64,000 bases of DNA from Mobula birostris (GCF_030028105.1 NC_092379.1:28947821-29011820); one strand, 5' to 3'; shown: positions 2,307 through 62,888, counted from the first letter of the stretch. Translations and numbers: made by a program. The notes: generated by a model from the sequence alone, not told the origin.

Positions 2307-2374
2307 CACGTGACCATAGATGATTTCCGGGTGCGCCCCTTCCAGATTCACCGCGAACAGGCGCCCTCCTGTGA
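2307..2374 (-). promoter_or_regulatory. RSS-distal module: CTCF-like motif (2361-2374, TCACAGGAGGGCGC on minus) plus E-box CACGTG (2307-2312)
   Basis: Similar to the CTCF core CCASYAGRKGGCRS; same spacing recurs after other V segments. Binding is not shown. Confidence 0.55.
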
Positions 2375-2398
2375 GAGCTTTTTGCATCATAAAGGACT

Positions 2399-2437
2399 GT
2401 TTTTTGTCAGGACCCGCCGTCTCCATACAACAGTGTG
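2399..2437 (-). other. 23-RSS of V segment A1
   Basis: Heptamer CACACTG (2431-2437), 23-bp spacer, nonamer ACAAAAAAC (2399-2407). Confidence 0.9.
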
Positions 2438-2857
2438 GTACTCACTGCACAGAGATACCTGCCAGAGTCCGACATCAGAGCTTCATAAATGTTCAATTGA
2501 GCCGTCCTGCTGTCTCTCTGCAACCTAACGGTAAACCGATTAATTCGATTCATTCCTACATAGCTGGTTACCTTCACCAAATACTTTGGAGGTTCTACAC
2601 TATGTTGAATGTACCAAAACATATAGTCAGCATCGTCAGTGTAATTACAGTTCAGTGTAATGTTCTGTCCTTCCTTGGCCGTTAAGTCGGGAGGATCCTG
2701 CGTCACTGAATCTTTCCCACTCGCTCCTGCAATAAAGGACAGAATACATCAACAACGCCGGCTTGTATTGAACGCCGGGATAATTCGCTGGCTACCTTCG
2801 CAAACACTCACCAGGCAGCACAAGCAGTCCAATCATTAATAAACAGAGGGAAATCAT
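2438..2857 (-). CDS. TRAV: TCR alpha/delta-type V segment A1, intact (leader 2812-2857, intron 2727-2811, V exon 2438-2726)
   Basis: Leader MISLCLLMIGLLVLP-G, GT-AG intron, in-frame GASGKDSVTQDPPDLTAKEGQNITLNC..FWYIQH..DSGRYLCAVST with Cys-Trp-Cys, followed by 23-RSS. Symbol is class-level only; alpha vs delta cannot be fixed from the window. Confidence 0.9.
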
Positions 2858-2925
2858 GGTGTCTAATTTCTGACTGAATCGAACGGCAGATGCCTTCCAA
2901 GACGTAGCTATCACTCAACAGATAT

Positions 2926-3035
2926 TGTGGTGTGAGGTCTTTTCAGCGATACCTTTCACCTTATGTAAGAGCGGATGCAATCTCCTTGTTAAACAATTGG
3001 CTGACACAATGAACCAAAAGTATCTGAGCACCAAT
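2926..3035 (-). promoter_or_regulatory. Conserved V promoter elements: RUNX-type TGTGGT (2926-2931) and two oppositely oriented CCAAT boxes (2996-3000, 3031-3035)
   Basis: The CCAAT pair (35-36 bp apart) recurs upstream of other family-A leaders and the divergent V at 48.6 kb; TGTGGT recurs in several family-A copies. Confidence 0.5.
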
Positions 3036-4139
3036 CAGAATCTGTTTCTCCATACGTCATTCTACCTGTTTCTCCGCTATTTCATAGTCCCGCGTTCCTC
3101 TCTCTCTCTCTCTCTCTCTGTCTCCTTCTGACTGTGTGCTACTGACTTTGTTACCCTGTTATCTGCATTATCACAACTTATTCAAAAATTTATCAATGTG
3201 TAATCATACCCAACTAGGCATTTTCCACATGGTCGTTTCTTCGACATCGACAGCATGCTGCTGGAAGCAGTTCATTTATTTATTTGTTTGTTTAGTTAGT
3301 TATTTGGTGATATATCCCACAATAGTCCCGTAGGTCAACATTTTTCAATCTTCCGGCATTGAACTAGTTATTCAATGTCAGCAAGTGTTCATCTAGTTTT
3401 TGTTTGCTGTTGCGGAGCCAATCTGCCATCCACGCCAATAGACTCCTGAAAGCACACTTTGTGCAGTCAGCAATTTCTTCGTTAAGAAAAATACTCACAT
3501 CTGCATGCCCCTTGTAATTATTTCAAATCAAATTAAAATATCGTAATAACGCATTCGCCATTTCCACCCATAGGTCAAAGCGCTGATTGTCCTCTCTGTC
3601 TATGCCTCTGGACATATTATGCACAGTTATTAAGTTACCTCTCATCTTCCTTCTTTACAGAAAGAAAGGGCCTTGTTCGCAGAAACTGAAATGACCTGTG
3701 GAAGAAACAGGCACTTGCCGATGTGTAACTGAAGTTGAGCATTACGATTCCTCTTCCTTTAATTGTCGATGCAGAGAGCCAGATCTTTCCCACACGCTTC
3801 TACAGAAGAAGGATAAAATAACTGAACATCAAGTGTTTCCATTGCACCTGCGAGACACCAATGACTATTTGCGAAAAGAATCGCCAGGCAGCGTAGACGA
3901 TATAATCAGTAAGGGTCAAGGACGCACATGGCGTCTGCTCTCACGCACGGTCCTAAGCAGATAACAAGAAGCTGATACCACAGATTTGCGAGAATTATGT
4001 CAGATACGCTGCACCCTTCACTTCGTGGAAAACCTCCGTAATTTGTTCTTCTAACTGGAAGTTGAACCTTGGAAGTCAGAGCTGAGATTATTTCACCACC
4101 GTCGTGAATGGAACCAATACACACTCGGTTTACTTATCA

Positions 4140-4850: not shown

Positions 4851-5567
4851 CTGTCTGTGTTGAAAGTAGATCATTCACTCTAACTATATTCTGTTTGTCA
4901 ATCTCACCTTTCCATTTTTGTTCGACTTTAATAAACACTTCATTTCTTGCAATGAATTCCTTCTGTCCCTATCTTGTTACTGTCTTATATTTCCGACGCT
5001 ATTTCACTCAATGGCACCCAGTCTGCCTCTGTATTCCAATTTTACTAATTCATCAATGTAGCTTTAAACTTGTTGTGGGAACTGCCTTTCATCCAACGCC
5101 AGTCCATTCGGTATTAATTTGCAATTCGTAAAATAGATATCAATTTATCTGTGCTTTTAGGACGCTAATGTCAATAGACACCACCTGCAATTTATCTTCA
5201 TTGGAAGCATTTAGTGTGACAGCATGTCGAATGCTATCTAGTTATATACAACCTCAGTATCTCTTGGTTGTACTCATCTTCACTGTTAATACCTCGAGGT
5301 AGTGAAAAATGAAGTCCAGCAAAAAATTAAACACAAGATATTCTTAGAGACAACAGAGCGACATGGACACCACCATATAGTAGAAATGCTTCGGAAAGCC
5401 ACCACAATAACCCTGGGTAAATCTAAATTCAAGCAGTGTTCCACAAGTTTAGTCACATTTTGTTGCTGAATGCGGCATTTCAAATCCACCACGTGATCTT
5501 CATGCTTTCTGCGTACAGCTGTTCCAGTTCCGCAGCAAAAGGCGCCCTCTAGTGACTACGCAACGCT

Positions 5568-6023
5568 GGAGTTTGTCCAGACCCGTTGTTTCCCTACAAC
5601 ACTGAGGGGTCCTTTGTACAGAAGTACTGGATACGCTTGAGTCTGGGACAACAATTCCACAGATACTTGAATGAGCTCACTCTGCGTATGTGCATTACAA
5701 CTGGAAACCTCGCCCGACATTCTGAGGCCGCTGCCGTTTTCCTCAGCCATAGAGCTTCAGCAGGTTTTAGGACATTCTCCGCGATGCGGAGTGTATCAAA
5801 TAGGTTTGTCTTAGTTCGTGTGTAACTGCATTTCAGTGTTATTATCTGACTTCCGTCAGCCGATAATTTTGGAGCATGCTGATGACAGATTTGAACTTTG
5901 AAATAAAGGACAGAATGCAGTGACTTCCCTGACTTGCACTGAACTACACTCTCGCTGGTCATGTGTGCAGCATCTTAGCTGTGAGGATGGAGAATGAAAC
6001 CTATAAGAAACTGAGGAACACAT
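5568..6023 (-). pseudogene. V pseudogene, family B (B1), with 23-RSS remnant
   Basis: Leader ATG 6023 with donor mutated to CT; frameshifted V (IITLKCSY..LLKLYG..QYFCTKD); heptamer CTCAGTG (5600-5606), 23-bp spacer, nonamer ACAAACTCC. Confidence 0.8.
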
Positions 6024-6219
6024 ATTCACTCGCTTCAGCCCCGATAGGATCGCAAATCACTTAGAAGAATATATCAACAGGACAGATAATGAAAAGTAAA
6101 ATGTATGAGAAGTAGATTGAATGGTGCAGTGCTCAACGATTGCAAGATAAAACCAGAACATAGGCTATATGAGAACTAGTCAGAATCCAGTTACGTTGAA
6201 ACCCCCATTTTGCCTTTTC

Positions 6220-6374
6220 NNNNNNNNNNNNNNNNNNNNNNNNNNNNNNNNNNNNNNNNNNNNNNNNNNNNNNNNNNNNNNNNNNNNNNNNNNNNNNNNN
6301 NNNNNNNNNNNNNNNNNNNNNNNNNNNNNNNNNNNNNNNNNNNNNNNNNNNNNNNNNNNNNNNNNNNNNNNNNN
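6220..6374. other. Assembly gap (155 N)
   Basis: Run of N at the position where the paralog (~54060-54130) has a CT-rich tract. Confidence 0.95.
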
Positions 6375-6859
6375 CCCCACTCTACCTCTCGCCATTTATC
6401 TCTCTTAACCTCCGTCTCTCTTTCTAACTCTCTTGTTCTATCCCTGCCTACTTCTCTCTCTCCTTCTCACTCCGGACATTGATTTCTCTTTCTCTGTTTA
6501 TCTACATGTTTCAACGCTCTAACAACTCACTCTCGCTGTCTTTGGCATTCTGCCCCTGCTCTATACTTTTTCACACATTGTTACTCCATGCTAACCAGTG
6601 TATTCGTGACGAATCCGAGGAGTCATCCGCAAAGTTATGACTTTCCACTGTTGCTGTTATGTAACTTATTATTACCATTTTAAGTTATTGACGGAATATT
6701 TTTCAATCTTCGAGGACCCCGTTGGCTATTTCTTTTCAATAGCACATCAAATATCTCGTCCCATGAACGAGCTGGGATTAGATGTTTAGCGGACATGCAA
6801 GGCTCTGCCTAGAGCAGGCAAACATTGCGAACACTGAGGTCTCCCAGATTTGTATCGCC

Positions 6860-7274: not shown

Positions 7275-9570
7275 GGTAATTTGAATAAAATAAACAGATG
7301 AAGATTTGAAGACGTTACTCCGATAAAACAGAAGTTACTCAAGTAAGTTCAAGAGACTTTCCGGGAGACTCGGCGCTTTCATTTCGAAGTATATTCGTCT
7401 TCCCTCTCTCTTCCTATGTTCCTGTTGGAGAGTTTATTGCCGATTGCTGTCAGGGATATTGGAATTAAAAGAATGCTTGACTGTAACATTGAAGCAGCGA
7501 CTGCTGTCTCCTATTCCGCTTTCGAACAAGCCATATCAGACTCTCCCTTGTTAGTGTGAGAGACAGAACGCCTGTGGGACAAAGAAATGATGCAGTAAAC
7601 AGCTGTTTTTTCCTGTACTGTAGGCCAAGCCTCTCCTTGTACCTTTGCGGTGACTTCGAGGGTGGCTGGTGGTGGAAAAGCTGATGCTTTATATTGCAAT
7701 GAGTGAGAGAAGTAGAAGCGAGTTAGGTTAATGCTGCCGGCCGCTGATTTTGCGAACGACGTGACAGTGGGCGTTCAGGTTCTTACCTTTTTTTCTGATA
7801 TTGATGCTTTGGGTTTTTGTTCTGTATTAAAGATATCTGTGGAGACTATATATTCAGGTCATGTATTATGTCCATTCTCTGATTTTAAACGTAACCGTTA
7901 AAGCATGCTGGGCATTCTTTTCACAGTACTCTGTTATATCTGCGAACAGCAAAATATATAATGAACGTAAACCAGTTTGGGTTATCTGTAAGCGTCTGTA
8001 AAGTGAAGGAATACATCAGTCTGTCGTTAATTAGTGCATAAAATATCGGTTGAGCGGGGAGGCGGAGGTAGTTGTGTACTGCAGACCGCCTATCGTTGCA
8101 CCCTGGCGATATCTGGCGTTATTTCACCATGGATCCGGTTGGATTCCGACAATTTCGATGCTGTCAACAAATACTTCTGTGCTCAATATCCACTTTTTGC
8201 GCGTTACCAAGTACTACACTGCCCGCAAAAGACGTCCTGGGTAGCATGTGCCCGTGATCGGAGGATCACTGAGTGTGGACGTTAAGAGGAATGTGCGACA
8301 ATTGGACCGATATATCAGTTGACCATAAGACCATAAGAATCGAGGAACTGAATTAGGCCACTTGACCTTTCGAGTCTGCTCCAACATTTCAGATGAGACA
8401 GTGTGGTTATGGAATTCTTCGACATAGTAAACATTTAACTAATATAAGAGGTTCAAAAAATCGAAATATACCTTTGGAAACAGAAGCTATCACTGTGTGC
8501 TCCCTCGGTAGTAATGTGACATTCCCTCTCTGTGTCTCTTCGATCGTGAGGTGATTCAAAGTTCTAAAAGCAGCAATAGATTATTTCCTTTGCAAGAGTA
8601 TTGAACGCTAGGATAAAATTGAATCTCAATCCCATCCACCTCGGTATGACCTTGCTCTTTAATTCCTGCCTGCGCTGCATTTTATACGGTTCTGCAATTT
8701 ATTTTCGCGCTATTTTATTGTTTAACTTTGTACTACCTCCGCAAGGGGTGTATTCAATTCATCTGTAAAAACCGAATCGAGGCAATCATATGACAATAAT
8801 AAACAAATTTCTATCCAATTTACATATGTAGCGAACATCACTTGGCGATAAAATTAGATCAGTTAAATCTGGTTGGGAAACTACATTATTCAAGCAATTA
8901 CCCTTTTGTTATCCCATTCCCTCTCTCCTCCCTCGCTCTCTTTTAGACTGCAAATGCCTTAAAAAAATATGAATCTCGGGGTAGTATGCGATCACGTATA
9001 TGTAGTTTAATCATAAATTCATTTTCAGTATTGAACCTCTTTCTCACAGCAACGACCAAAATAGTATCTGCATTCTCTGTCACGCTAAGCATCGCAGGCT
9101 GTGTCGCATCATCTAAATTCTCAAAATAATCAATAAGTAGTTTTTCCAACATCCTGACTTTCATTAGCGTGCCACTTGCAATTCTTCATCAATCGGAAAA
9201 CCAGGAATTTTCTCACCACCTGGTGTCCTTTAGTCAGCCATTGTGCCATTTAAGTATATCCCGAATCTACTCCGTTCTCATTATTTCTCACTGCAGACAT
9301 TCAAACAAAGGGCCGTAAGAAAATGTCAGACAAGGATCTCAATGGTGATATACCATTGCAGCAACAGAGCGTGGGTGAATGCACATTCCGATATCCCGGA
9401 AAGTTGTGTAGTTCCAGTTTGGGTCCGCGTTGTAATCAGCAACAGTTCCTTTAGATTCGGCGTCTTGTGCTCTTAAGTAGGATACGTGACCATGGCTGAT
9501 GAGTGCGCCCCTTCGAGTTTCGTCGCAAAATGACTCCCTCCAGAGAAAGCTTTTAGCATTATAGAGGACC

Positions 9571-15840: not shown

Positions 15841-16096
15841 GTCTTACATGCATCTACAGGTGGACGTTAAGCGAACCCACATTCGCTAGACAGCTGTTAT
15901 CGATCGCGCCATGTAAAGTCCCAGTTTGGGTGCGCGTTGTATCAGGAAAAGTTCCTTTAGCTGCGGCGCCCTGTGCTGCTGATTGCAGCTCTCTTAAGAA
16001 GGGCAGGAAACCATGGCTGATTTCCGGGTGCGCCCCTCCCACTTTCTGGGCAAAAAGACGCCCTCAACTGAGAGCATTTTGCATTATTCAGGACCG

Positions 16097-16560: not shown

Positions 16561-17889
16561 GATGTCTAATTTCCTGCTGGATCGACCGGCTGACGCCTTC
16601 CAGGTCGCAAATATCACTTAGCAGTTAGTGTTGTGTGGGATCGCTGAAGCGGTACCTTTTACTATGTGTAACCCCGGGGACGTTTCCCTGGTTAAAAAAT
16701 TCGCTAACACTAAGAACCGAGCCTTTCTGAGCGCTATTCAGAATCCGCTTTGTTTCCACTCGTCCTTCTGGGTTTTTCTCCTCTCATTTATGGTCCCGCG
16801 TCTACCCCCCACACTATCCCGTCTCTCTGTGTCTCTTTATCTCTGTCTCACGCTCTCTCTTTCTTAGTATGCCCAACTGCCTATTCCCCCTGTTCTCTGC
16901 ATAATCACAGCATATTCACGTATTTCTCGATGTGTAATCAAAATCAGTTATGAATGTTCACGTGGTCGCTTCGTCATATTCGTCAATATTACGCCTGAAG
17001 TATTTATTTATTTATTTAGTTAGTTAGTTAGTTAGTTATTTAGAGATATATCCAGAATTGTCCCTTAAATCAACATTTATCAGTCTTCCGGCATTGAACT
17101 AGTTATTCAATGTCAGCAAAAGCTCATCTGGTTGTTCCCTAATCTTTGTTTGCTGTTAGGGAGCCAATCTCCTATCCACGCCAATAGACTCCTGACAGCA
17201 TCCTTTATGCAGCCACCACTCCTTTCGTTAAAAAAAAACTCACATATGGCAGTCCCCGAATCTTTGTTTTCTGTTAGTGAACAAAAGACTGAACATTCTT
17301 CAAAAGAAGGACAAAATGACTGAACATCCATTTCTCCTGCTGCACCCGCAAGACACACACTGTATAAATCATCAATGTAGGTTTCAGCTGGTGGTGGGAT
17401 AATCGTTTAGTAAAAAGGCCAGTCCACTTGGGATTCATTTTCAATGCGAAAGATGAACATCTATTTATCTCCACTTTGAAGAAGCTAATGTTAATAGACG
17501 CCGCATGAAATTTATCTTCATCTAAGCATTTAGTGTTACAGCTAATAGGATGCTGTCTGGTCATATACACCCTCAGTATTTCCAGATTGCACTCATCTTC
17601 ATTGCTAATCCCTCAAGGTGGTGCAAAATTAAGTCCACAAAAAAATATAGCCACAAGATATTGTTATAGGCAATAAAGAGAGAGATGGTCACCGAGATGT
17701 AGTGGAATTGTTCCGGAAAACCGTCACGATATCTCTAGGTAAAGCTAAACTTAAGAAGTGTTCCACAAAGTTGGGCGCATTTTGCTGCTGAAAGCAGCGT
17801 TTTAAGTTGACCACGTGATCCTCATGCTCTGTGCGTGCAGCTGTTCCAGTTTCCCAGCAAAAGTCGCCCTCTAGTGATCACACAAGGCT

Positions 17890-20287: not shown

Positions 20288-22319
20288 CCTGTGAAACGAT
20301 GAAATGTTGCAGTAAACAGCTACCTTTTGTTGCACTGTAGACCAAGCTCCTCTTTGTGTTTGCGGTTGTTTCGATGGTGGTTGGTGGTGGAACTGCTGAT
20401 ACTATATGCTAGAATAAGTGAGAGATGCAGAAGCTGGTCAGGTTAATTCTGCTTGTCGCTGATTGAGCGACTGATATGGCAGGGGACTTTTTAGGTTCTT
20501 ATCTTTTTTCTGATATTGATGCTTGTGTTTTTGCTCTTTTTTAAGGATGTCTGTGGAGACAGTAAATTTTAGGTTGTGTATTTTGTACCTCTCTGATTTT
20601 AAGCGGAACTGTTGAAACAAGCTGGGCATTCGTTTCGCTGTACCCTGGTACAACTGACAACAACAAATATATAATATACATAAACCAGTTTGATGTAACT
20701 GTCAGCGTCTGCAAAGTGAAGGAATATATCAGGCTGTCCTTCATTAGTTCACAGAACATGGGCTGAGCAGGAAAGTGGCGGTGGTGGTGGACTGCAGAGT
20801 GCCTATCATGACACCCTGGCGATATCTGGTGTCATGAAACAGAGATTCGGTTCGATTCTGACCTTCCGATGCTGTCAGCGGATACTTACGTGCTCAGCTT
20901 CCACAATTCCCGAGTTGCTATGTTTTCCACTGCCCGAAAAAGACGCTCTTGGTAGCACGTGCTCATAATCGGAGGATCAGTGAATGTACATGTTAAGAGG
21001 AATTTGCGAAAATGGACAGATAAATCAGTTGACAATAAGACCATTAGATATAGGAACTCAAGTAGGCCATTTGGCTTGTCGAATCACCTCCGCCATTTCA
21101 GAGGAAAAGATGTCGTGATGGAAATATTTGATACACTAAACATAATTAAAATGAGATTTTCAAAAAGACGAAATATACCTTTGGAAACAGATGTCATCAG
21201 TTTGTGCTCCTTCGACAGTAACCGGGCGTTCTCAGTGTTTGTCTCTTCCATCGGTGGGAAAACACAAATTTCTCAAACCAAGTTCCCACGAAACAAGAAT
21301 AGACTATTCCCACTTGCAAGAGTATTAAACTGTAGCATGACATTGAATCATAATCTTGGTATGACCTATCTCTTTATTTCCTGCCTGCGCTGCATTTTGC
21401 GACGTCTGTTACGGTTTATTTTTGCATCCTTTTATAGTTTTTCTTTGTACTGCCTCGATAAGCTGTGTAGTGAATTCATCTGTATAAACAGAATCAATGC
21501 AATAGGCGACAATAATTTAAAAATTCCGTTTTCAATTTAGATATGTAGCAAAATGTTACACGTGGTGATAACATCGAAACTGTTAAATCCGTTTGGCAAA
21601 CCAGATTATACAAGCAATCAATCTGTTGTGATCCCATTCCCTCTCTCTTCCTTCGTTCGCTTTTATACTGAAAATGCCTTCAAAAATATGAATCTCGGGG
21701 TAGTATGCGGTCACGTATATGTACTTTAATCATAAAATTAATTCAAACATTGAACGTTTTTCTCACAGCTTGAGAATGTAACGACCAAAATAGTATCTGA
21801 ATTCTCCAACACGCGAAGCATCCGCAGGTTCTGTCGAATTATCTAAATACTCAGTATAAATCATAAGTAGCTGCTGCAACATCCTTAATTTTAGTAGCAT
21901 GTCACTTGCAATTATTTGTCAATTCGAAAACGACCAATTTTCACACCCTCTGTTTTCCTTTATGTCAGCCATTGTGCCATTTAAATAACTCCCGGTTCCA
22001 CTCCGTCCTCATTATTTCACACTGCAGATACTTGAACAAAGTGGCCAAAGACGATGTCAAACAAGGCTGTCAATCGTGATAAGCCGTCGCTGCAAAAGAT
22101 GGTGGGTGATTGCACATTGCGGTATCCCAGAAAGTTATGAAGCTCAGTTTGTGTCCGCGTTGTAATCAGGAACTGCTCCTTTAGCTTCGGAGCCTTCTGC
22201 TGCTGAATGCAGCGGTCTGAAGAAGGGCACGTGACTGTGACTGATTTCTGGGTGCGCCCTCTGCAGATTCCGCGGAATAAGGCGCCCTCCAGTGAGACCT
22301 TTTTGCAATATACAGAACG

Positions 22320-22358: not shown

Positions 22359-22781
22359 GTACTCATTGCGCAGAGATACATGGCAGAGTCCGACACAAGA
22401 GCTTCACGGATATTCAATTGAGACATCTTGCTGCCTTTCTCTAAAGTAGCAGTAATCCTCTCTGAATACCGCTGCGTTCCTCCTGTGCTATATAACTTCA
22501 GCAAATAATTTGGAGGTCCTCCACTATGTTGAATGTACCAAAAGATATATGCATTAGCATCGGTGTAACTACAGTTCAGTGTTACGTTCTGTCCTTCCTC
22601 AGTCGTTACATCGGGAGGAGCCTGCGTCACTGAATATTGCCCACTCGTTCCTGCAAGAAAGGACAGAATATAACAACAACGCTGGCTTGTATTGAATGCC
22701 GGGCAAACTTGCTAGCCAGCTTCGCTGAGACTCACCAGGCAGCGCAGCCAATGCAATCAGCAATGAACAGAGGGAAATCAT
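22359..22781 (-). CDS. TRAV: TCR alpha/delta-type V segment A4, intact (leader 22736-22781, V exon 22359-22650)
   Basis: MISLCSLLIALAALP-G, GT-AG intron, GTSGQYSVTQAPPDVTTEEGQNVTLNC..FWYIQH..DSAMYLCAMST, open frame, RSS. Confidence 0.9.
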
Positions 22782-22999
22782 GGTGTCTAATCTCTGGCTG
22801 AATCGAACGGCAGATTCCTTCCAGGGCGTTATTATCACAACAGATATTGTGGTAGTAGACTGTTTCAGCAATGCCTTTCACCTTGTGTAAAACCGGAGAT
22901 GTTTCTCTGGTTAAAAGATTGGCTGACAGAAAAAACCGAGCCTTCCTGAGCACCAATCAGAAGCTGTTTTGTATCTATACGTCATTCTGCCTGTTTCTC

Positions 23000-23129
23000 N
23001 NNNNNNNNNNNNNNNNNNNNNNNNNNNNNNNNNNNNNNNNNNNNNNNNNNNNNNNNNNNNNNNNNNNNNNNNNNNNNNNNNNNNNNNNNNNNNNNNNNNN
23101 NNNNNNNNNNNNNNNNNNNNNNNNNNNNN
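23000..23129. other. Assembly gap (130 N)
   Basis: Run of N where paralogs carry a (CT)n tract upstream of the V promoter. Confidence 0.95.
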
Positions 23130-25475: not shown

Positions 25476-26859
25476 ACATGATGATGCCCGACCTGCTGAG
25501 TCCCCCAGCGTGTTGTGAGTCATGGCTTCGACTGGACTGGAACACGAAACACAGAGCCGGGACTCCTCCTTGGAAACAGGACATGGGGCCGGGACTCTAC
25601 CTAGACACGGAACACAGAGCCAGGACCGTTCTTGTGTGCAGGACGTAGGGCCAGGACTCCTCTTATACACGGAACGCTGAACACCAAGAGACAGATCTCC
25701 ACTCAAGGTAGCGGCAAACCGCCGGACCTACCTAGCGAAGGCGAGGACACGATTAGACAGGACCACACAACAATAGACTGTTCCTTCTATTGACGCGACA
25801 AGGCTCCAGTCTCACTCCGGCAGGTTAACTTGACGGAGATTCTGCCGAAGTCAGAGATGAGGTATAGACGAGGTAGAGACGAGGTAACTCACGGGGTTCT
25901 GGCGGGGACGGTCCAGCCACTATCGCGGGGACGGTCCAGCCACTATCACTGGACCCCAGAGCTATTTATGTTGCCAGCCCGAGACGAGAAACAGTTGCCT
26001 TCATTAAGGCTCCCAAGGGAACAAAGGAAAAACAGAATTTCTGGAGTACGGAATCCACGGACCGGACCGTAACATCCGTAAATTCCTCTGCTAAATGGGA
26101 GCGGAACTGGGGAAGTCAGAGCTGAGCCTATTTAGCCAGCGATCTGAATGGAACTACGACACTGTCGGTTTCTTAATAATTTGCTCTAATTCTAATGTAT
26201 TTGTCGATCTCACACCTGTGTCCTTCGTTGCACTTTAAATGGCACTTATTTCTAGCAATGGATCTCAGTCCTTGGTCCGTCTTTCCTTACTCTTTTAAAT
26301 TTACGTCGCCATGTCACTCTGTGTCTGTCTCTGTATTTCAATTTAGTCTTTTATTTGTCTACCTCATCTCTCTCTCTCTCTCTCTCTGGGTACATCCTTT
26401 TACAAGCTGCCAGTTTTCTGCAAAAAAAATCAATTGTTCTCCCCTTTTAAGAAGCTAATGTTAATAGAGCGAACCTGAAATTTATCTTCATTAGAAGGAT
26501 TTACATGACAGCTTAGCTGATGCTGTCTAGTGACATGCACCCTCAGTATTTACAGGTTGCACTCATCTTCACTGTTAATCGCTCAAGATAGTCAAAAATT
26601 ATGTCCATCCAAATGTTAACCGCACAATGTTGTTATAGGCAGCAGACATACAATATCGTTATGGACGCTGAGGTATAGTGAAAATGTTTCGGAAAGATGC
26701 CACAGTAATCCGAGGTAAAGCTGAATTCAAAAAGTGTTCCTCAACGTTTGGCGTATGTTGCGGCTGAATGCAGCATTTTAAGTAGACCACGTGATCCTTA
26801 TGCTTTGTGCGTGCGGCTCTTCCAGTCTCCCAGCTAAGGCGCCCTCTAGTGATCACGAG

Positions 26860-37692: not shown

Positions 37693-40246
37693 GGTGTCTA
37701 ATCTTTGTCTCGATCGAACGGCAGAGTTATTCCAGGACGTAATTAACACTCAACAGATATAGTGGTGTGAGATCATTTCAGCACTAACTTCACTTTGTAC
37801 AAGGCCCGGAGCGTTTCCCTGGTTAAAGATTCACTGACATGAAGAACCGAAACCTTTCCGAGCACCGAACAGAATCAGCTTCGTTTCCACTCGCCATTCT
37901 GCTCGTTTCTCCGTTCGTTCAAGGGCTCATGCGCACCACCCCACCTCCCCTCTCGCGCGGGCGCGTGCTTTCTCTCTCTCTCTTCCCCTCCCTCTCTCTC
38001 TCCCCCTCCCCCCCTCTCTCTCCCTCTCTCTCTCTCTCTCGATACCAATGGGAGAGATGGAGACATTACTGCCGATTCCCAGTTGGGCATATCGGTATAA
38101 AAAGAATGCTTAATACTGACTGTAACATCGAAATAGTGAGAGCTGATTCCTCTCTCGCTTTTGAACGAGCCATATCAGTTTCTCATTTATTAGTGAGCGA
38201 GAGAGAGAGAATGCCTGTGAAACGATGAAATGTTGCAGTAAACAGCCAGCTTTTGTTGTACTGTAGACCAAGCCACTCTTTGTGTTTGCGGTTGTTTCGA
38301 TGGTGGTTGGTGATGGAAATGCTGATGCTATATGCTAGAATAAGTGAGAGATGCAGAAGCTGGTCAGGTTAATGCTGCTTGTCGCTGATTGTGCGAGGGA
38401 TGTGGCAGGGGACTTTTAAGTTCTTATCTTTTTTCTGATATTGATGCTTCGTGTTTTTGTTCTGTTTTAAGGATGTCTGTGGAGATTGTAAATTTCAGGC
38501 TGTGTATTTTGTACCTCTCTGATTTTAAGCGAAACCATTGAAACAAGCTGGGCATTCGTTTCGCTGTACCCTGGTACATCTGACAACAACAAATATATAA
38601 AATACATAAACTAGTTTGATGTAACTGCGAGAGTCTGCAAAGTGAAGGAATATATCAGGCTGTCTTTCATTAGTTCATTAAACATGGGTTGATCAGGAAA
38701 GTGGCGGTAGGGGTGGACTGCAGAGTGCCTATCATGACACCCTGGCGATATCTGGTGTCATGTCCCAGAGATTCGGTTCAATTCCGACCTTCCGATGCTG
38801 TCAGCGGATACTTACGTGCTTAGTTTCCACGATTCCCGAGTTGCTATGTTTTCCACTGCCCGAAAAAGGCGCTTTGGGTTGCACGTGCTCGTGGTCGGGG
38901 ATCAGTGAATGTACATGTTAAGAGGAATTTGCGAAATTGGACAGATAAATCAGTTGACAATAAGACCATTAGATATAGGAACTGAAGTAGGCCATTTGGC
39001 TTGTCGAGTCAGCTCCGCCATTTCAAAGGAGAAGATGTCGTGATGGAATTATTGATACACTAAGCATATAATTAAAAAGAGATTTTCAAAAAGTCGAAAT
39101 ATACCTTTGGAAACAGATGCTATCAGTTTGTGCTCCTTCGACAGTAACCGGACGTTCTCAGTGTTTGTCTCTTCCATCGGTGGGAAAACACAAATTTCTC
39201 AAAACGAGTTCCCATGAAACAACAATAGACTATTCCCACTTGCAAGAGTATTAAACTGTAGCATGAAATTGAATCATATCTTGGTATGACCTATCTCTTT
39301 ATTTCCTGCCTGTGCTGCATTTTGATACGTCTGTTACAGTTTATTTTTTTATCCTTTTATTGTTTTACTTTGTACTACCTCGATAAGATGTGCAGTGAAT
39401 TCACCTGTATAAACAGAATCAATGCAATAAAGCGACAATCATCAACAAATTCAGTTTTCAATTTAGATATGTAGCAAAATGCTACACGTGGAGATAACAT
39501 CGGATCCGTTAAATCGGATTGGGAAACCAGATTATACAAGCAATCAATCTGTTGTAATCCCATTCCCTCTCTCTTCCTTCGCTCGCTTTTATACTGAAAA
39601 TGCCTTGAAAAATATGAATCTCGGGGTAGTATGCGGTCACGTATATGTACTTTAATCATGAATTTAATTCAAACATTGAACCTTTTTTCTCACAGCTTGG
39701 GAATGCAACGACCAAAATAGTATCTGCATTCTCCAACACGCTAAGCATCCGCAGGTTCTGCCGAATTATCTAAATACTCAGTATAGATCATAAGAGGCTG
39801 CTGCAACATCCTTAATTTTAGTAGCATGTCACTTGCAATTATTTGTCAATTCAAAAACGACCAATTTTCACACCCTCTGTTTTCCTTTAGTCAGCCATTG
39901 TGCTATTTAAATAAATCCCGGTTCCACCCCGTCCTCATTATTTCACACTGCAGATACTTGAACAAGGTGACCAAAGACGATGTCAAACAAGGCTGTCAAT
40001 CGTGATATGCCGTTGCTGCAAAAGATGGTGGGTCATTGCACATTCCGGTATCCCAGAAAGTTATAAAGCTCAGTTTGTATCCGCGTTGTAAACAGGAACT
40101 GCTCCTTTAGCCTCGGCGCCTTCTGCTGCTGAATGCAGCGCTCTTAATTAGGGCACGTGACTGTGACTGATTTCTGGGTGCGCCCTCTGCAGATTCCTCG
40201 GAAAAAGGTGCCCTCCACTGAGACCTTTTTGCAATATACAGAACCA

Positions 40247-42560: not shown

Positions 42561-43304
42561 AGGCCCCCGACGGAACAAGGGAAAAACGGAATAATTGCAG
42601 TACTGAATCCATGAACCGGACCGTGAACCGGAATGTGCACTTCACGGACTGGACCGTGACATCCATAAATTGCTCTGCAAAATGGGAGCTGAACCGGGGA
42701 AGTGAGAACTGAGCCTATTTAGCCAGCGATCTGAATGGCACCACGAAACTGTCAGTTTCTTAATAATTTACTCTAATTCTAATGCATTTGGCGATCTCAC
42801 ACCTCCGTCCTTAGTTGTACTTTAAATGACACTTCATTTCTAGCAATGGATCTCCGTCCTTGGTTCGTCTTTTGTGACTCTCTTAAATTTTCGTCGCCGT
42901 GGCTGTTAATAGTGTCAACCTGAAATTTATCTCCATCAGAAGGATTTACATGACAGCTTAGCCTATGCTGTCTACTCACATGCACCCTCAGTATCTCCAG
43001 GTTGCACTCATCTTTACTGTTAATCGCGCAATCTGTCAAAAATTATGTCCAGCTAAATGCTAACCACACCGTATTGTTATAGGCAACAGACACACAATAT
43101 TGTTATGGACACTGAGATATAGTGAAAAATGTTTCGGAAAAATGCCACATTAATCCGAGGTAAAACTGAACTCAAGAAGTGTTCCTCAATGTTTTGCGCA
43201 TTTTGCTGCTGAATGCAGCATTTTAAATCGACTATGAGATCCTTATGCTTTGTGCGTGCGGCTGTTCCCGTCTCCCAGCTAAGGCGCCCTCTAGTGATCA
43301 CGAG

Positions 43305-47930: not shown

Positions 47931-48116
47931 CAGCCATTCCTGCAAGCAAAGCAGCTGTCCAACTAACTAAACAATGTAGTCAGTAATTTCTCCCCTTTCC
48001 CCTGTAGTTCCGCCTTCTTAAGTCAATCACGTGACAGCGGTGGATCTGTGTTTGCGCCCCGGCTGTTTTCCGTCAAAGGGCTCCCTCCAGCGAGCGCTCA
48101 CTGCATCACGGAGGTC

Positions 48117-49329: not shown

Positions 49330-49450
49330 TTTGCAGATGCTGAAAATCCAACGCAACTCAAAAAACACTGGATGAAGTCAGCAGGTCAGGCAGAACCTGG
49401 AGAAAATGGAAATAGTCGACGTTTCGGGCCGAGACCTTCTTTAGGACTAA
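49330..49450 (-). mobile_element. PLE pLTR remnant with degenerate hammerhead (49413-49449)
   Basis: TAGTC-CTAAAGA-..-GAAACGTC-GACTA; core G mutated. Confidence 0.65.
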
Positions 49451-52173: not shown

Positions 52174-52692
52174 ACTCTATCTATCTCCTCCCTCTTTTGC
52201 ACGGATTCCCTGTGGAAGTTCCTAAATGGCAAACATTTATGCACGCATCGGTATATTCCTCCTTAAATGAAACTGCTACTGGGGTTTCTGGGTGTATTGT
52301 AGCTCTTGTCGCCCTGCCCCTTCGCCCCCTTGTAGCCTCTGAGCAGGGAGGTTGTGTTGTCTCCTCGCACCTCAAGACAGGGAGTTATTCGATGTTGAGT
52401 AGGATGCAGTGAGCCACGGGCACTCTTCTTTCCATGCGCCCATTGTACGCAGGGATCTGGTCTGTCCAGATCGGCTAGCGCACCGTATTAGGGAGGGCTG
52501 ATCATGCAAATATGCATAGCGGAACCCGGCACAAAACCACTGATGATATTTGAATCCAAGCAGTGGCCATTTCATGTCCAAACGAAATGAAATCTTCACC
52601 GATGTAGTTTGCTACTGAATTTCACTCTCGTAAGTTAACCGCGTGATTCTTGCAAATATTTGGGTGCGCCACTTCGAATTTTCTAGCAGGAC

Positions 52693-52706
52693 CCGCCCTC
52701 TAGCGA
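52693..52706 (-). promoter_or_regulatory. Isolated strong CTCF-like motif TCGCTAGAGGGCGG
   Basis: Close match to the CTCF core; same orientation as the RSS-linked motifs. Confidence 0.45.
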
Positions 52707-53334
52707 CGGTTCAGTGCATCACACCTCGCACAGACTGTCTTTTAAACATAAATTCACTTTGAAAAATGACCATTACTCACAGCCCGGGAATGCAATGACC
52801 AAAATACTATTTGCATTCTCTATCACGCTAAACATCTGCAGGATCTGCCGCATTATCTGAACACTCAGTTTAAATCATAAGTAGACACTGCAATAGCCTC
52901 AATTTCAGCAGCGTGGCGCGTGCTGTTCTTTGTCAAACTAAAAACAACGAATTTGCCCACGCTCTGTTTTCCCTTAGCGAACCACTGACCAACTTAAATA
53001 TATTACAGTTCCACTCCATCCTATTGCTTCTCCATGCAGAACCTCAAAAAATGTGGCCGAAGGCGACGTCATACTAGGTTGCCAATCGCGATATGCTGTT
53101 GCAGCAAAGAGGGTGGGTGAATGCGCATTGCCGTATCCCGGAAATACATTATAAAGATCCAGTTTCGGTTTGCGTTGTAGTCATGAACTGTTCCTTTACC
53201 TTCGCCGCCTTGTGTTGGTGATTGCAGCGCTCTTAGGTAGGGCACGTGACCACGGCTGTTTTCAGTGTGCGCTCTCCCAATTCACCGGCAAAAGACGATC
53301 TCCAATGAGAGAATTTTTTGCTTTATACAGAACC

Positions 53335-58365: not shown

Positions 58366-59029
58366 ATACAAGCTATCACTCTATTGTGCTCCCATTCCCT
58401 CTCTCCCTCTCTCGCTCTCTTTTCTGCTGAAAATGGCTTCAGAATATAAGTGTATGGGCCGTATACGGTCAAGTATATGTACTTTAATTATAAAGTTATT
58501 TTGAACAGTGAACCTCTTACGCTATCACGCTAAACATTGGCAGGTTCTGTCGCATTATCTAAATACTCAGTATAAATCAATGTAGCTGTTGCAGCATCCT
58601 TCGTGTCAGTAGCATGTCATTACAAATCTTTGTCAATCCGAAGACCACTATTTTCCTACCTGCGTTTTCCTTTTGTCTGCAATTGTCCAAATTAAAAATA
58701 TCCCGCTTCCATTCTCATTATTTCTCGCTGCAGTCATTAGAACAAAGTGTCCATAGACAATGTCAGGCTGTGTTGTCAATCGTGGTATGCAATTGCAGCA
58801 AAAGAGGTTGCGTGAAAGAACATTGCAGTACCCCGGAAATGCATTTCAAAGTTCCAGTTTAGTTGCGCATTGCAATCAGGAACTGCTCCTTTAGATTCGG
58901 CGCCTTGTGCTGCTGATTTCAGCGCTCTTAGGTAGTGCACGTGACCATGGCTGAGTTCTATGTGCGCCCCTTCCAATTTCCCGGAAAAAAGGCGCTCTCC
59001 AGTGATAGCCTTTCTGCATTATACAGAGC

Positions 59030-59699: not shown

Positions 59700-59800
59700 G
59701 CCTCTCTCTCACCCCCACCTTCTTCCTTTCTCTCTCTCCTTCTCTGTCTTTCTCTCTCTCTCTCTACTCTCTCTCTCTCCCCCTTCTTTCTTTCCTCCCT

Positions 59801-59874
<74 letters not shown>

Positions 59875-59878
59875 CCAT
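59700..59878. repeat. Long (CT)n / polypyrimidine tract
   Basis: Directly visible; source of the spurious RERE/SLSL ORFs. Confidence 0.95.
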
Positions 59879-60582
59879 GCTGCTTTGTTTTTTTTTACTG
59901 TTTGGAGGATGTCTGTGGAGGGTATGAATTTCGTGATGTGTATTGTGCACATTCTCTGATTTTAAATGGAACCATTGAAGCATGCTGGATAGGTTTTTCG
60001 CTGTACCCTGGTACATCAGAAAAAGAAACAAAAACATAATGAACATTAATCAGTTTGGGGAAATTGTGAGGGTCTGCAAAGTGAAGGAACATATCAGGCT
60101 GTCCCACAGCTCATAGAATATCGATTGAGCGGAAAAATAGAGTTGATGGAATGCACAATACCCACCTTTCAGTGCGGTGATATCTGGTGGCATGTCACCA
60201 GGGATCCTGTTCGGTTCCGACATTCGATTCGATCAGCAGATACCTGTGTGCTCAGTTTCCACATTTCCCGTATTATCATGTTGTCTACGTCCCGCAAAAG
60301 ATGCTCTGGGTAGCATTTCTCCTGATCGAAGTGTCACTGAGGTACGTGTAAAGAGGAATTTGCGAAAGTTGGAAAGGTAAATCTGTGAACCATTCGAACA
60401 TAATATATAGGAACAGAATTAGGTGATTTGTCCGTTCGAGTCTGCTCCGCCATTTCAGATGAGACAGTGTGGTAATGGCATTTTTCGAAACGGTAAACGT
60501 ACCATTAAACGGAGAGTTTCGGAAATTCGATATATAGCTTTGGAAACAGATGCAATAAATGTCTGTTCCTTTGACAGTCACT

Positions 60583-61710
60583 GGGAAATCTGCAGATATT
60601 GGAAATTCAAGCAACACACACAAAAAATGCTGGTGAACACAGCAGGCCAGGCAGCATCTATAGGAAGAGGTACAGTCGACGTTTCGGGCCGGTAACCTAC
60701 GGCATATTAACTGAAAGAAGTGATAGCAAGAGATTTGAAAGTGGAGAGGGAGGGAGAGATCCGAAAGGATAGGAGGAGAAGAGGGGGGCGGCGTGGATCT
60801 AAGAGCTGGAAAGTTGATTAGCAAAGGGACACCAGACTGGAGATAGGAGAGGATCATGGGACGGTAACCCTGGGGAGAGAGAGAAGGGGGAAGGGGAGCC
60901 GGAGGGTGGAGTGCAGGCAAGGAATTATAGTGAGAGGGACAGAGGGAGAAAAAAGAGAGAGGGAAAGAAAAAAGGAGAGGAATCAAACAGGTATTAAATA
61001 AATAAATAAGGTCTGGTGTGTTAAGGGGATAGGGGGCATTAACGGAAGTTGGAGAAGTCAATATTCATGCCATCAGGTTGGAGGCTACCCAGACGGAATA
61101 TAAGGTGTTGTTCCTCCAACCTGAGTGTGGCTGCATCTTAACAGTGGAGGACCGTTGACAGACATATCGCAATGGGAATGGGACGAGGAATTAAAATGTG
61201 TGTCCACTGGGAGATTCTGCTTTCTCTGGTGGACAGAGCGTAGGTGTTCAGCGCAGCGGTCTCTCAGCCTGCGTCGTGTCTCGCCAATATATAGAAGGGG
61301 CAGCACCGGACGCAGTATATCACGCCAGCCGAATCACAGGTGAAGTGTCGACTCATCTCAAAGGACTGTCTAGGGCCCTGAATGGTGGTAAGGCGGGGAG
61401 TGGAAAGGCATGTGTAGCACAGGTTCCGCTAACAAGGATGAGTGCCGGGAAGGAGATCGGTGGGAAGGAATTGGGGGCCGGGGAAACTAATGATCAAAGG
61501 AGTTGCGTAGGGAGCGATCCCCGCGAAAGCAGAAAGGTGGAGGGTGGGGGAGGGAAAGATATGCTTGGTAGTGCGATACCGTTGGAGGTGGCAGAAGTTA
61601 CGGAGAATTATATGTTGCACCTGGAGGCTGGTGGGCTGGTGGGTAAGGACAAGGGGAACCCTATTCCTAGTGGGTTGGAGGGAAGATGGGGTAAGTGCAG
61701 GTGTGCGTGA
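60583..61710 (-). mobile_element. Penelope-like element fragment, paralog of 112-1258
   Basis: ORF 61085-61306(-) LLYIGETRRRLRDRCAEHLRSVH..PVDTHFNS (GIY-YIG); flanked by ACAGTCA direct repeats. Confidence 0.85.
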
Positions 61711-62849
61711 AACAGTCATCAACAGTAATAGGTTGTTCTCTCTATGTGTCTCTTCCATCGGAGGGAAAACACTAAAGTGGAAAAGCAGGTTCCAGTGTGC
61801 ACAAGTATACATTCTAACCGATTATAAGAGTATTAACTGTGGATTGAAATTGAATCTCAATCCCAATCCACCAGGGTCTGATCATGTTCTTTATTTGATG
61901 GCTGCGCAGCGTTTATATACGTCTGTTACACTTTGTTTATATTGTTTTATTATTTTACTTTGTACTACCGCGAAAGGCAGTGCAGCTAATTCTTCTGCAA
62001 TAACTGAATCGATGCAATTATAGGACAATAATAAACACATTCCGTTCGCAATCAAGGTACATACACCAAAATACTCCATGTGGTGATTACATCGGATCCG
62101 TTAAATCTGGTTGGGAAACCAGATTATACAAGTTATCACTCTGTTGTGATCCCATTTCCTCTCTTCCTTTCTCGCTCTTTCATTCTGAATATGACTTCAA
62201 AATATGAGTCTTAGCGTAGTATGCGGTCGCCTATATGTATTTTAACCAAAAGTTAATTTCAACACTGAACCTCTTGCACACAGCACGGGAATACACCGAC
62301 GAACATAGTATCTGCATCTCTATCACGCTAAACATCTGCAGGTTCTGTCGGATTATCTAAGCACTCCGTATAAACCATGGATAGCTGTTGTATCTTCCTT
62401 AATTTCAGTGGGTTGTTAATTTCTGGGTTTCGTCAGCATGCCGCTTTCAATTCTTTGTCATTCTGGAAAACACAGTTTTGCCACCCTCTGTTTTCCATTG
62501 ACCACTTTAAATATATTCCGGTGCCACTCTGTCCGTATTATTTTTCCTTGCAAACAAACGAACAAACTGGCCAAAGACAATGTCAGACAAGGCTGTCAAT
62601 CGTTCTATACCCTTACAGGAAAAGAAGATGGGCGAATGCACATTGCGTTATTCAGGAAATGAATTGTAAATTTCCAGTTCGGTTGCGCCTTGCAATCAGA
62701 AATTGTTCCTTTAGATTCGGTGCCTTGTGCTGCTGCTTACAGAGCTCTTAGGCATGGCACGTGACCATGGACGATTTCCGGGTGCGCCCCTTCCAGATTC
62801 GCCGCGAACAGGCGCCCTCCTGTGAGAGCTTTGTGCATCATACAGGACT

Positions 62850-62888
62850 AGTTTTTGTCCGGACCCGCCGTCTCCATACAACAATGTG
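62850..62888 (-). other. 23-RSS of V segment A10
   Basis: CACATTG (62882-62888), 23-bp spacer, ACAAAAACT (62850-62858). Confidence 0.9.

What the first reader, a model, noticed from the sequence alone, without database searches (positions are those of the whole stretch)
2307..62858. Conserved RSS - CTCF motif - E-box module 3' of nearly every V segment
Seen: a co-oriented CTCF-like 14-mer sits 23-25 bp past the nonamer in family A and the divergent V (2361, 9533, 16058, 22282, 40208, 48080, 62812; also 58992, whose RSS is deleted) and ~12 bp past it in family B (5542, 17864, 26839, 43284). A CACGTG(AC/AT) E-box lies ~46-49 bp beyond it (2307, 5490, 17812, 22228, 26788, 40154, 48028, 58938, 62758; also 53243, where the CTCF-like motif has decayed). 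The geometry holds across V lineages whose coding sequences differ strongly. Established: in mouse Igh, CTCF elements just 3' of D-proximal VH RSSs promote their use during loop-extrusion RAG scanning, whereas mouse Tcra/d CTCF sites are largely at V promoters. Inference: a VH-like RSS-adjacent CTCF architecture, plus a USF/TFE-class site, in a probable chondrichthyan TCR V array. I do not know this to have been described.
Basis: partly seen in the sequence, partly recalled or inferred. Interest (0 to 1): 0.8.

Follow-up and report, generated by a model that had tools for sequence, protein, structure and literature searches.

The report
CTCF sites behind ray TCR V genes
In this ray T-cell-receptor V-gene array, each V gene is followed by a conserved ~170-base flank built around a binding motif for the genome-folding protein CTCF, a layout known from mouse antibody heavy-chain genes. 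The motif is intact only behind four dead V genes and is weakened behind the working ones.

Summary
All 12 CTCF-like 15-mers and all 10 CACGTG boxes sit where stated, on the V-sense (minus) strand. The fixed geometry exists because the ~170 bp after the RSS is one homologous module carried by every duplicated V unit.

- only the four family-B sites are canonical, at 14.5-17.4 bits, and all four follow pseudogenes. Family-A sites, including the intact V segments, score 2.7-7.5 bits because G replaces a near-invariant A.
- **Selection on the CTCF core:** it is the best-conserved 15-column window between the deep manta lineages (1 of 634). Against little skate only 2 of 400 windows match it. In family B it took 1 step against 6.5 expected. 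Within family A it evolves neutrally.
- **Skate:** three V segments carry 16.9-17.4-bit sites at +24/+31, in the same orientation.
- **E-box:** it is conserved across manta lineages but absent in skate and neutral within family B.
- **Other taxa:** a toothfish V array has the same layout. Bamboo shark, gar, Danionella and a probable amphibian mostly lack it.

The most likely reading is an old RSS-adjacent CTCF element, partly decayed in this window. The scan has already noted the same layout on other DNA of this genome: TCR-beta (s1-145128, s1-145130) and a window 72 kb away (s1-145455). No occupancy or function was tested.

The parts
2240..2398 (-). Flank module of V A1 (intact V). It holds the CTCF-like core at 2360-2374 (TCACAGGAGGGCGCC, 7.5 bits), GGGGCGCAC at about 2331-2339, and the E-box at 2307-2312.
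2399..2437 (-). 23-bp-spacer RSS of A1 (CACACTG ... ACAAAAAAC). The V exon spans 2438-2726.
5541..5555 (-). Canonical CTCF core behind pseudogene B1 (TCACTAGAGGGCGCC). The 19-mer at 5540-5558 scores 16.8 bits. E-box at 5490-5495.
9532..9546 (-). Decayed core behind pseudogene A2 (TCTCTGGAGGGAGTC, 2.7 bits). The E-box has decayed to CACGTA.
16057..16071 (-). Decayed core behind pseudogene A3 (TCAGTTGAGGGCGTC, 3.2 bits). The E-box is lost.
17863..17877 (-). Canonical CTCF core behind pseudogene B2 (TCACTAGAGGGCGAC, 14.5 bits). E-box at 17812-17817. B2 shows no RNA contig coverage.
22281..22295 (-). G-variant core behind the expressed V A4 (TCACTGGAGGGCGCC, 7.1 bits). E-box at 22228-22233.
22188..22270 (-). 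Two extra CTCF-like motifs specific to the A4/A5 lineage: 22252-22270 (10.7 bits, about +50 from the nonamer) and 22188-22206 (9.3 bits).
22359..22822 (-). V A4. The V exon runs to 22649, the leader intron is spliced at 22649/22735, and the leader exon begins at 22735. RNA contigs leave the V at 22362 into J-like sequence (...GSGYGKL, ...NAGANTKLI).
   Evidence: translation
26838..26852 (-). Canonical CTCF core behind pseudogene B3 (17.4 bits). E-box at 26788-26793.
40114..40221 (-). A5, a duplicate of A4 with a 7-residue in-frame deletion in the V. Core at 40207-40221 (5.7 bits), second site at 40178-40196 (10.7 bits), third site at 40114-40132 (14.5 bits). E-box at 40154-40159.
43283..43297 (-). 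Canonical CTCF core behind pseudogene B4 (17.4 bits). The E-box has decayed to CTCATA.
48079..48093 (-). Decayed core behind the intact divergent V A6 (TCGCTGGAGGGAGCC, 6.2 bits). The likely skate counterpart is canonical. E-box at 48028-48033.
52692..52760 (-). Orphan copy of the module (TCGCTAGAGGGCGGG, 10.6 bits, followed by ...GTGGCGCACCC) with no recognisable V.
53243..53311 (-). Module behind the chimeric pseudo-V A7. The core is destroyed (-11.2 bits) and the E-box at 53243-53248 is kept.
58938..59005 (-). Module of the truncated A8, whose RSS is deleted. Core at 58991-59005 (TCACTGGAGAGCGCC, 4.7 bits). E-box at 58938-58943.
62758..62825 (-). Module of the intact V A9, a duplicate of A1. 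Core at 62811-62825 (7.5 bits). E-box at 62758-62763.
6220..6374 (.). Assembly gap upstream of the B1 unit. Its flanks are collinear with the paralogue at 53743-54434. It lies 665 bp from the nearest module and was not filled.
23000..23129 (.). Assembly gap upstream of the A4 promoter region. Its flanks are collinear with the A3, A1 and A2 units, which imply about 110-135 bp missing. It lies more than 700 bp from the A4 module and was not filled.

Best explanation
The ~170 bp after each V RSS descends from one old regulatory flank whose core is a CTCF-binding element (CBE). The motif lies on the V-sense strand, so it points toward the J/C side.

**Shown.**
- The element predates the skate-ray split.
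- It has been kept by selection in some lineages: skate V segments and manta family B.
- In manta family A it carries an A-to-G change at a near-invariant motif position, and since then it has drifted at the neutral rate, fastest in pseudogenes.

**Inferred mechanism**, by analogy with mouse Igh proximal VH CBEs.
- CTCF bound next to the RSS stalls cohesin-driven loop extrusion coming from the J-side recombination centre.
- This holds that RSS near RAG and blocks scanning further upstream.
- In this window the four canonical sites would act as loop anchors or barriers between V units even though their own V segments are dead.
- The intact family-A V segments have at best weak sites. The A4/A5 lineage has gained two better motifs 28 and 93 bp further on, which may be turnover.

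**E-box.** The TCACGTG box (the T-flanked form preferred by USF/TFE-class factors, from general knowledge), together with the conserved GGGGCGCAC, may be an accessory that keeps chromatin open, added in the ray lineage. This is the least secure part of the explanation.
For: **Motif strength and placement in the window.**
- Family B scores 14.5-17.4 bits. These are four of the six hits of 12 bits or more in the window, and all six lie on the V-sense strand.
- 20 of 22 hits of 8 bits or more lie on the V-sense strand.

**Constraint.**
- In family B the core took 1 parsimony step against 6.5 expected, and only 9 of 981 windows are as conserved. The best 60-column window of the whole ~1-kb unit starts exactly at the core, although the V segments are pseudogenes.
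- Between the A, B and A6 lineages the core is 78-84% identical, against 18-64% for neighbouring flank and 56-66% for the V exon. It is the top window of 634.

**Skate.**
- Three V segments on contig L001 each have a forward site of 16.9-17.4 bits at +24 or +31. These are the only strong sites in 13.5 kb.
- In manta-versus-skate comparisons the core is 0.79 identical against a median of 0.59, and 2 of 400 windows reach it.
- GAGGG is the only run of invariant columns in the 12-sequence alignment A1.

**Other evidence.**
- An independent parallel exists in toothfish: RSS plus 60 bp of flank with a 16.8-bit forward site are 88-94% identical among V segments whose exons are 56-63% identical.
- The mechanism has a mouse precedent (PMC5859386; Ba et al. 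preprint).
Against: - Family-A sites, which stand behind all the intact V segments, are sub-threshold at 2.7-7.5 bits. Within the family they evolve neutrally: 6 steps against 6.5 expected, and the whole module 71 against 69.
- A4 is rearranged and expressed with only a weak primary site.
- The canonical sites follow pseudogenes with CTC heptamers, so no link between motif strength and V use is visible here.
- The deep-lineage tests rest on only 3 manta and 2 skate lineages, and gene conversion could inflate them.
- The whole V unit, intron included, is alignable between skate and manta at 50-65%. Slow neutral evolution therefore explains part of the similarity.
- Bamboo-shark V flanks (5 V segments), a probable amphibian (0 of 12), gar (0 of 8 adjacent) and Danionella (1 of 13) lack the layout.
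- No binding, chromatin or Hi-C data exist, and the J/C side is outside the window, so convergence of orientation could not be checked.
Confidence: 0.62

Rival explanations
1. The module is only inherited baggage. Its motifs ride along with tandemly duplicated V units in a slowly evolving genome, perhaps homogenised by gene conversion. The CTCF and E-box matches have no function in this locus today.
For: - The whole flank is homologous in all copies.
- In the A1/A4/A2 group the module is as diverged as the far flank (0.66-0.77 against 0.64-0.78; 71 steps against 69 expected).
- The family-A core is neutral.
- The skate and manta V units are alignable throughout.
- The best motifs sit behind dead V segments.
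Against: - The core is the top-ranked window in deep manta comparisons and near the top in manta-skate comparisons.
- In family B the core is far below the neutral expectation even though the V exon and RSS decay.
- In the 13-copy set, RSS heptamers and nonamers changed more than the flank.
- Toothfish shows a sharply bounded RSS-plus-CTCF block.
Confidence: 0.2
2. The conserved flank is functional but is not, or not only, a CTCF element. Another factor may recognise TCAC(T)GGAGGGCGCC, GGGGCGCAC or TCACGTG. The flank could be a small promoter- or enhancer-like or barrier element that opens chromatin at the RSS, in the manner of the chicken HS4 core, which combines CTCF, USF and VEZF1 sites.
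For: - In family A the most conserved pieces are GGGGCGCAC (1-2 steps against 3.9-8.5 expected) and TCACGTG (1 against 4.4; 21 of 587 windows), not the CTCF-like core.
- TCACGTG is the top 7-column window between deep manta lineages.
- The G-variant keeps 14 of 15 core bases in the expressed A4.
- The HS4 core combines CTCF, USF and G-string VEZF1 sites within 275 bp (PMC2795164).
Against: - Neither skate flank has CACGTG at the homologous place.
- The E-box is neutral in family B, where B4 lost it.
- No transcripts cover the module in four RNA runs.
- No RNA family matches it.
- GGGGCGCAC is not shared by family B or skate.
Confidence: 0.13
3. The CTCF motif was spread by a transposable element (SINE-borne CTCF sites, as in mammals) that happened to land behind V segments.
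For: Elasmobranch SINE-like repeats are present in the window (19734-19802) and in the skate flank.
Against: - The motif sits at a fixed distance from the RSS, inside a flank that is continuous with the V unit.
- It occurs only behind V segments or V relics in the window.
- No RNA or SINE family match was found.
- The skate SINE insertion lies after the site, not around it.
Confidence: 0.03

Closest known systems
RSS-adjacent CTCF-binding elements of D-proximal mouse Igh VH segments (for example the VH81X-CBE)
   Same: The CTCF motif lies within tens of bp 3' of a V 23-RSS. All sites share one orientation relative to V transcription, pointing toward the (D)J side, and they are repeated behind many V segments, pseudogenes included (PMC5859386 Table 2; Ba et al. 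preprint; here).
   Different: The locus is TCR-alpha(/delta), not Igh, and the animal is a ray. In mouse the TCR-alpha/delta sites lie mostly at V promoters. Here the canonical motif survives only behind pseudogenes, and the intact V segments carry a G-variant of doubtful affinity. No occupancy or usage data exist.
Chicken beta-globin HS4 insulator core (CTCF FII + USF FIV + VEZF1 G-strings)
   Same: It is a compact element of under 275 bp that combines a CTCF site, a USF-type box and G-rich strings (PMC2795164). The manta module holds the CTCF core, GGGGCGCAC and TCACGTG within about 70 bp.
   Different: The resemblance is in composition only. Order, spacing and sequence are unrelated, the E-box is absent in skate, and no barrier or enhancer-blocking activity has been tested.
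CTCF motifs about 40 bp behind TCR-beta V RSSs in this same genome (earlier scan findings s1-145128 and s1-145130)
   Same: The same layout in the same animal: a co-oriented CTCF motif a few tens of bp past the V RSS.
   Different: It is a different locus with a different spacing (about 40 bp, against 12-31 bp). Those notes report well-preserved motifs at 15 of 17 V segments, whereas here only 4 of 15 are canonical. I did not re-test those findings.

Membership tests
V-RSS-adjacent CTCF-binding element (Igh proximal-VH type) | Significant match to the CTCF core motif | tested here: inconclusive
   Family B is met at 14.5-17.4 bits (p of 2e-6 or less). Family A and A6 are not met at the usual thresholds, at 2.7-7.5 bits (p about 1e-4 to 5e-4).
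V-RSS-adjacent CTCF-binding element (Igh proximal-VH type) | Lies within about 100 bp 3' of the V RSS | tested here: met
   The core starts 12 nt (family B) or 24 nt (family A) after the nonamer, and at +24/+31 in skate.
V-RSS-adjacent CTCF-binding element (Igh proximal-VH type) | Uniform orientation relative to the V segments | tested here: met
   All 13 sites, all 6 hits of 12 bits or more, and 20 of 22 hits of 8 bits or more are on the V-sense strand. The skate sites are also forward.
V-RSS-adjacent CTCF-binding element (Igh proximal-VH type) | Convergent with CTCF sites on the (D)J/C side | not testable with these tools
   The J/C region is outside the window.
V-RSS-adjacent CTCF-binding element (Igh proximal-VH type) | CTCF and cohesin occupancy in developing lymphocytes, and an effect on V usage | not testable with these tools
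   No ChIP, ATAC or Hi-C data were available. RNA contigs show only that A4 (weak site) is used and that B2 (strong site, pseudogene) is silent.
V-RSS-adjacent CTCF-binding element (Igh proximal-VH type) | Sequence constraint on the motif beyond its surroundings | tested here: inconclusive
   Met in family B (1 step against 6.5 expected; 9 of 981 windows), between deep manta lineages (1 of 634) and between manta and skate (2 of 400). Not met within family A (6 against 6.5; 14 against 15.9).
USF/TFE-class E-box element | CACGTG core with a 5' T flank | tested here: met
   TCACGTG is present in 10 of 13 module copies. The T-flank preference comes from general knowledge and was not tested.
USF/TFE-class E-box element | Conserved beyond neighbouring bases and across species | tested here: inconclusive
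   It is the top window between manta lineages (1 of 642). It shows a weak signal in family A (21 of 587) and is neutral in family B (3 steps against 3.0 expected). It is absent at the homologous place in both skate flanks (AAGTGG and CAAGTC).
HS4-like compound insulator | CTCF, USF and VEZF1-type G-string sites that together give enhancer-blocking and barrier activity | not testable with these tools
   Only the motif composition resembles it. No activity can be assayed here.

The most novel reading that the evidence does not exclude
RSS-adjacent, J-ward-oriented CTCF elements may be an ancient, or a repeatedly evolved, part of jawed-vertebrate TCR V arrays. They appear in batoid TCR-alpha, reportedly in TCR-beta of the same ray, and in a notothenioid teleost. 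That would make loop-extrusion control of V choice far older and more widespread than the mouse Igh paradigm.

In this reading the sites turn over. The old site in family A is weakened, and the expressed A4/A5 lineage has gained replacement motifs 28 and 93 bp downstream. In rays the element has also been extended into a small CTCF + E-box + G-string cassette that keeps each RSS accessible.
Probability: 0.25. Interest if true: 0.7.

Novelty: new member of a known kind. Interest (0 to 1): 0.5.

Why it matters
Control of V-gene choice by CTCF sites placed directly behind the RSS has been worked out almost entirely in mouse Igh. Mouse TCR-alpha/delta uses promoter-side sites instead.

A constrained, same-orientation CTCF element behind TCR-alpha V RSSs in skates and rays, with a parallel in a teleost, suggests the arrangement is either very old or easy to evolve. 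That gives a testable handle on how early loop extrusion was recruited to V(D)J recombination.

The window also offers a natural experiment: canonical sites behind dead V segments next to weakened sites behind working ones. I found no paper describing this in cartilaginous fish, but that library is incomplete.

Tried and rejected
**Searches that gave little or nothing.**
- A word-index protein search with V A1 found nothing. The same search with the skate protein found only itself plus two remote hits.
- The exhaustive representative search gave mostly bony-vertebrate V chimeras. Only one skate and two bamboo-shark loci could be fetched.
P0068 and P0089 are not on record.
- L003 is a 1.1-kb metagenome contig whose flank is too short to use.

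**Tests without useful signal.**
- CpG observed/expected gives no useful signal, because the genome-wide value is already 0.68.
- I laid DNA contigs of four relatives on 17600-22700 to count substitutions in the cores. Only 40 of 821 differences were printed, so no test was possible. The higher contig depth over both modules is only suggestive.
- The Rfam scan found nothing in the modules.

**Ideas dropped.**
- I considered a CTCF 'upstream motif' reading of the conserved TGCAGTGAG just 5' of the core in A6 and skate. The spacing I recall for that motif does not fit, and I could not verify it.
- E2F and other readings of GGCGCC were dismissed on sequence.
- The SINE-borne origin was rejected (see rivals).
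- The strong hit at 56525-56543 is a chance site inside a repeat, because its paralogue scores 0.

Full report
**What the window is.** All V-like segments lie on the minus strand and carry 23-bp-spacer RSSs. I distinguish three groups.
- Family A has nine copies. A1, A4, A6 and A9 have intact V exons and usable RSSs. A5 has a 7-residue in-frame deletion. A2, A3, A7 and A8 are pseudogenes or truncated.
- Family B has four copies, B1-B4. All have stops or frameshifts and CTC/CTA in place of the CAC of the heptamer.
- Family C has two pseudogenes, at 28351 and 44832.

Large parts of the window are recent segmental duplicates: A1/A9, A4/A5 and B3/B4, at 88-94% identity. Earlier scan notes call the genome a manta or devil ray. 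I did not verify the species, but the flanks align with little skate and not with bamboo shark. In RNA contigs, V A4 has its leader intron spliced (22649/22735) and leaves the genome at 22362 into J-like sequence (CAMRLHEGSGYGKL..., CAMRSNAGANTKLI...). This is direct V-J joining, so the array is TCR-alpha. B2 and the flank module have no RNA coverage.

**Assembly gaps.** The gaps at 6220-6374 and 23000-23129 lie upstream of the B1 and A4 units, more than 600 bp from any module. The sequences on both sides are collinear with paralogous units, which imply roughly 100 bp and 110-135 bp missing. I did not fill them, and nothing below depends on them.

**Checking the observation.**
- The 15-mer TCACTRGAGGGCGCC with up to 3 mismatches occurs 13 times, all on the minus strand, against 1.4 expected. 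These matches cover all 12 reported places plus an orphan at 52692.
- CACGTG occurs 26 times against 8.2 expected, including the 10 reported places.
- The spacings are as stated: 24 nt (family A) or 12 nt (family B) from nonamer to core, and about 47 nt from core to CACGTG.
- The constant geometry has a simple cause. The ~170 bp after the RSS is one homologous module in families A and B and in A6. Family B has a 14-nt deletion between nonamer and core. Family C keeps a relic (CTGACTAGAGAGCG) at the same place.

Its consensus and its behaviour on other loci look right.
- Family B scores 14.5-17.4 bits.
- Family A and A6 score 2.7-7.5 bits, because G replaces the A that is present in about 93% of sites in that matrix, and the pseudogene copies add further changes.
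- On random sequence of the window's composition, P(score at least 7.5) is about 9e-5 and P(score at least 14.5) is about 2e-6.
- The A4/A5 lineage has two additional motifs further on: 10.7 bits at about +50, and 9.3 or 14.5 bits at about +117.
- All six hits of 12 bits or more, and 20 of 22 hits of 8 bits or more, are on the V-sense strand. None lies at a V promoter.

**Is there selection?** The evidence runs in two directions.

Within families:
- Among A1, A4 and A2 the module is no better conserved than the far flank (0.66-0.77 against 0.64-0.78).
- Parsimony counts on family-A trees give 6 steps against 6.5 expected for the core and 71 against 69 for the module.
- In family A only GGGGCGCAC and, weakly, TCACGTG stand out.
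- In family B the core took 1 step against 6.5 expected, and 9 of 981 windows are as conserved. The best 60-column window of the whole ~1-kb unit starts at the core, although the V exons and RSSs are decaying. The E-box there is neutral, at 3 steps against 3.0 expected.

Between the deep lineages A, B and A6:
- The core is 78-84% identical and TCACGTG 95-100% identical.
- Adjacent flank is 18-64% identical and the V exon 56-66%.
- Each motif is the single best window of its size (1 of 634 and 1 of 642).
- In the 13-copy alignment, RSS heptamers and nonamers changed more than the flank.

**Other species.**
- **Little skate** (Leucoraja erinacea protein P0003, locus L001). The locus holds three V segments, two of them near-identical. 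Each has a forward CTCF motif of 16.9-17.4 bits at +24 or +31, and these are the only strong sites in 13.5 kb.
  - One skate flank matches manta A6 almost base for base around the core, but it is canonical where A6 has three changes. The other aligns with the manta module for about 200 bp.
  - In manta-versus-skate comparisons the core is 0.79 identical against a median of 0.59 (2 of 400 windows).
  - GAGGG is the only run of invariant columns in alignment A1.
  - Neither skate flank has CACGTG at the homologous place.
  - As a caution, the whole V unit aligns at 50-65% between the two orders.
- **Bamboo shark.** Five V flanks (L004, L005) have no CTCF motif within 250 bp.
- **Probable amphibian.** The array L002 has 12 V segments with none adjacent, and its strong sites are intergenic.
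- **Gar.** Forward sites lie 350-1100 bp after V RSSs.
- **Danionella.** 1 of 13 V segments has an adjacent site.
- **Patagonian toothfish** (L007). This array has the layout in clear form. Eleven V segments whose exons are 56-63% identical share the RSS and the first 60 bp of flank at 88-94%, with a forward 16.8-bit site at +34. Identity falls to 33-40% beyond +60.

**Reading.** The best-supported account is an old RSS-adjacent CTCF element. It is selected in skate V segments and in manta family B, and weakened and drifting in manta family A. Its function is inferred from mouse Igh, where proximal VH CBEs directly downstream of the RSS promote use of their V and impede further RAG scanning. 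In mouse Igh all V-region CBEs share one orientation, convergent with IGCR1 and the 3' CBEs. Mouse TCR-alpha/delta CTCF sites lie mostly upstream of V promoters.

The E-box is a conserved island within the manta lineage only. A role like that of the USF site in the chicken HS4 core is possible but unsupported. The rivals remain open: pure inheritance with gene conversion, or a different factor. SINE-borne spread is unlikely.

**Novelty and prior notes.** I found no paper on CTCF at RSSs in cartilaginous fish. The scan itself has already reported the layout on other DNA of this genome: TCR-beta (s1-145128, s1-145130), other V pairs, and a window 72 kb before this one (s1-145455). I did not re-test those.

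**Limits.**
- Few independent lineages were available.
- Gene conversion was not modelled.
- The J/C side was not seen.
- No occupancy or usage data exist.
- The relatives' read data were truncated.

Noticed in passing
window 53373-53530 (-), with upstream part 53743-54434: A7 is a chimeric pseudo-V. A family-B-type V 3' end (...SGILVPDSGVYLC) runs directly into family-A FR3 (KDSKTAQLN...YLCAMS). Its upstream region is 84-87% like the B1 unit. This resembles the V-to-V fusion noted 3.6 kb before the window (s1-145910).
   Followed up: partly
L007 (Dissostichus eleginoides contig JAOVFM010000367.1), V ends 5328-23714: Eleven diverged V segments share a sharply bounded block of RSS plus 60 bp (88-94% identity) that contains a forward 16.8-bit CTCF motif at +34. 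The V exons are 56-63% identical, and the flank beyond +60 is unalignable.
   Followed up: partly
window 22188-22270 and 40114-40196 (-): The A4/A5 lineage alone has changed TGGAAGGGGCGC to TGCAGAGGGCGC and CAGCACAAGGC to CAGCAGAAGGC. This creates CTCF-like motifs of 10.7 and 9.3/14.5 bits downstream of the weakened primary site, which may be motif turnover.
   Followed up: partly
window 52692-52760 (-): An orphan copy of the flank module has the canonical A (TCGCTAGAGGGCGGG, 10.6 bits) followed by ...GTGGCGCACCC. There is no recognisable V in front of it.
   Followed up: partly
window, whole: 20 of 22 CTCF-PWM hits of 8 bits or more lie on the minus (V-sense) strand. None sits at a V promoter.
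   Followed up: partly
window 19734-19802: A short repeat shows very high contig depth in the RNA and DNA runs of several related species, with many different flanking sequences. It is probably a SINE-type element.
   Followed up: no
L001 about 3545-3690: A SINE-like insertion in the skate flank lies immediately after the CTCF site and is bounded by a duplicated CAACTTAAGTAAAC. A similar repeat (CCCGAAACGT...TATTTCC) occurs in the window near 49400-49480.
   Followed up: no
window 28290 versus 44770 (-): The family-C pseudogenes differ by a 14-nt piece (CTGACTAGAGAGCG) lying between AGAGCG direct repeats. The piece is the relic of the CTCF core, present in C2 and absent in C1.
   Followed up: no
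L006 (Lepisosteus oculatus): Forward CTCF hits of 14-20 bits lie 350-1100 bp downstream of V RSSs rather than adjacent to them. They have the same orientation as the V segments.
   Followed up: no
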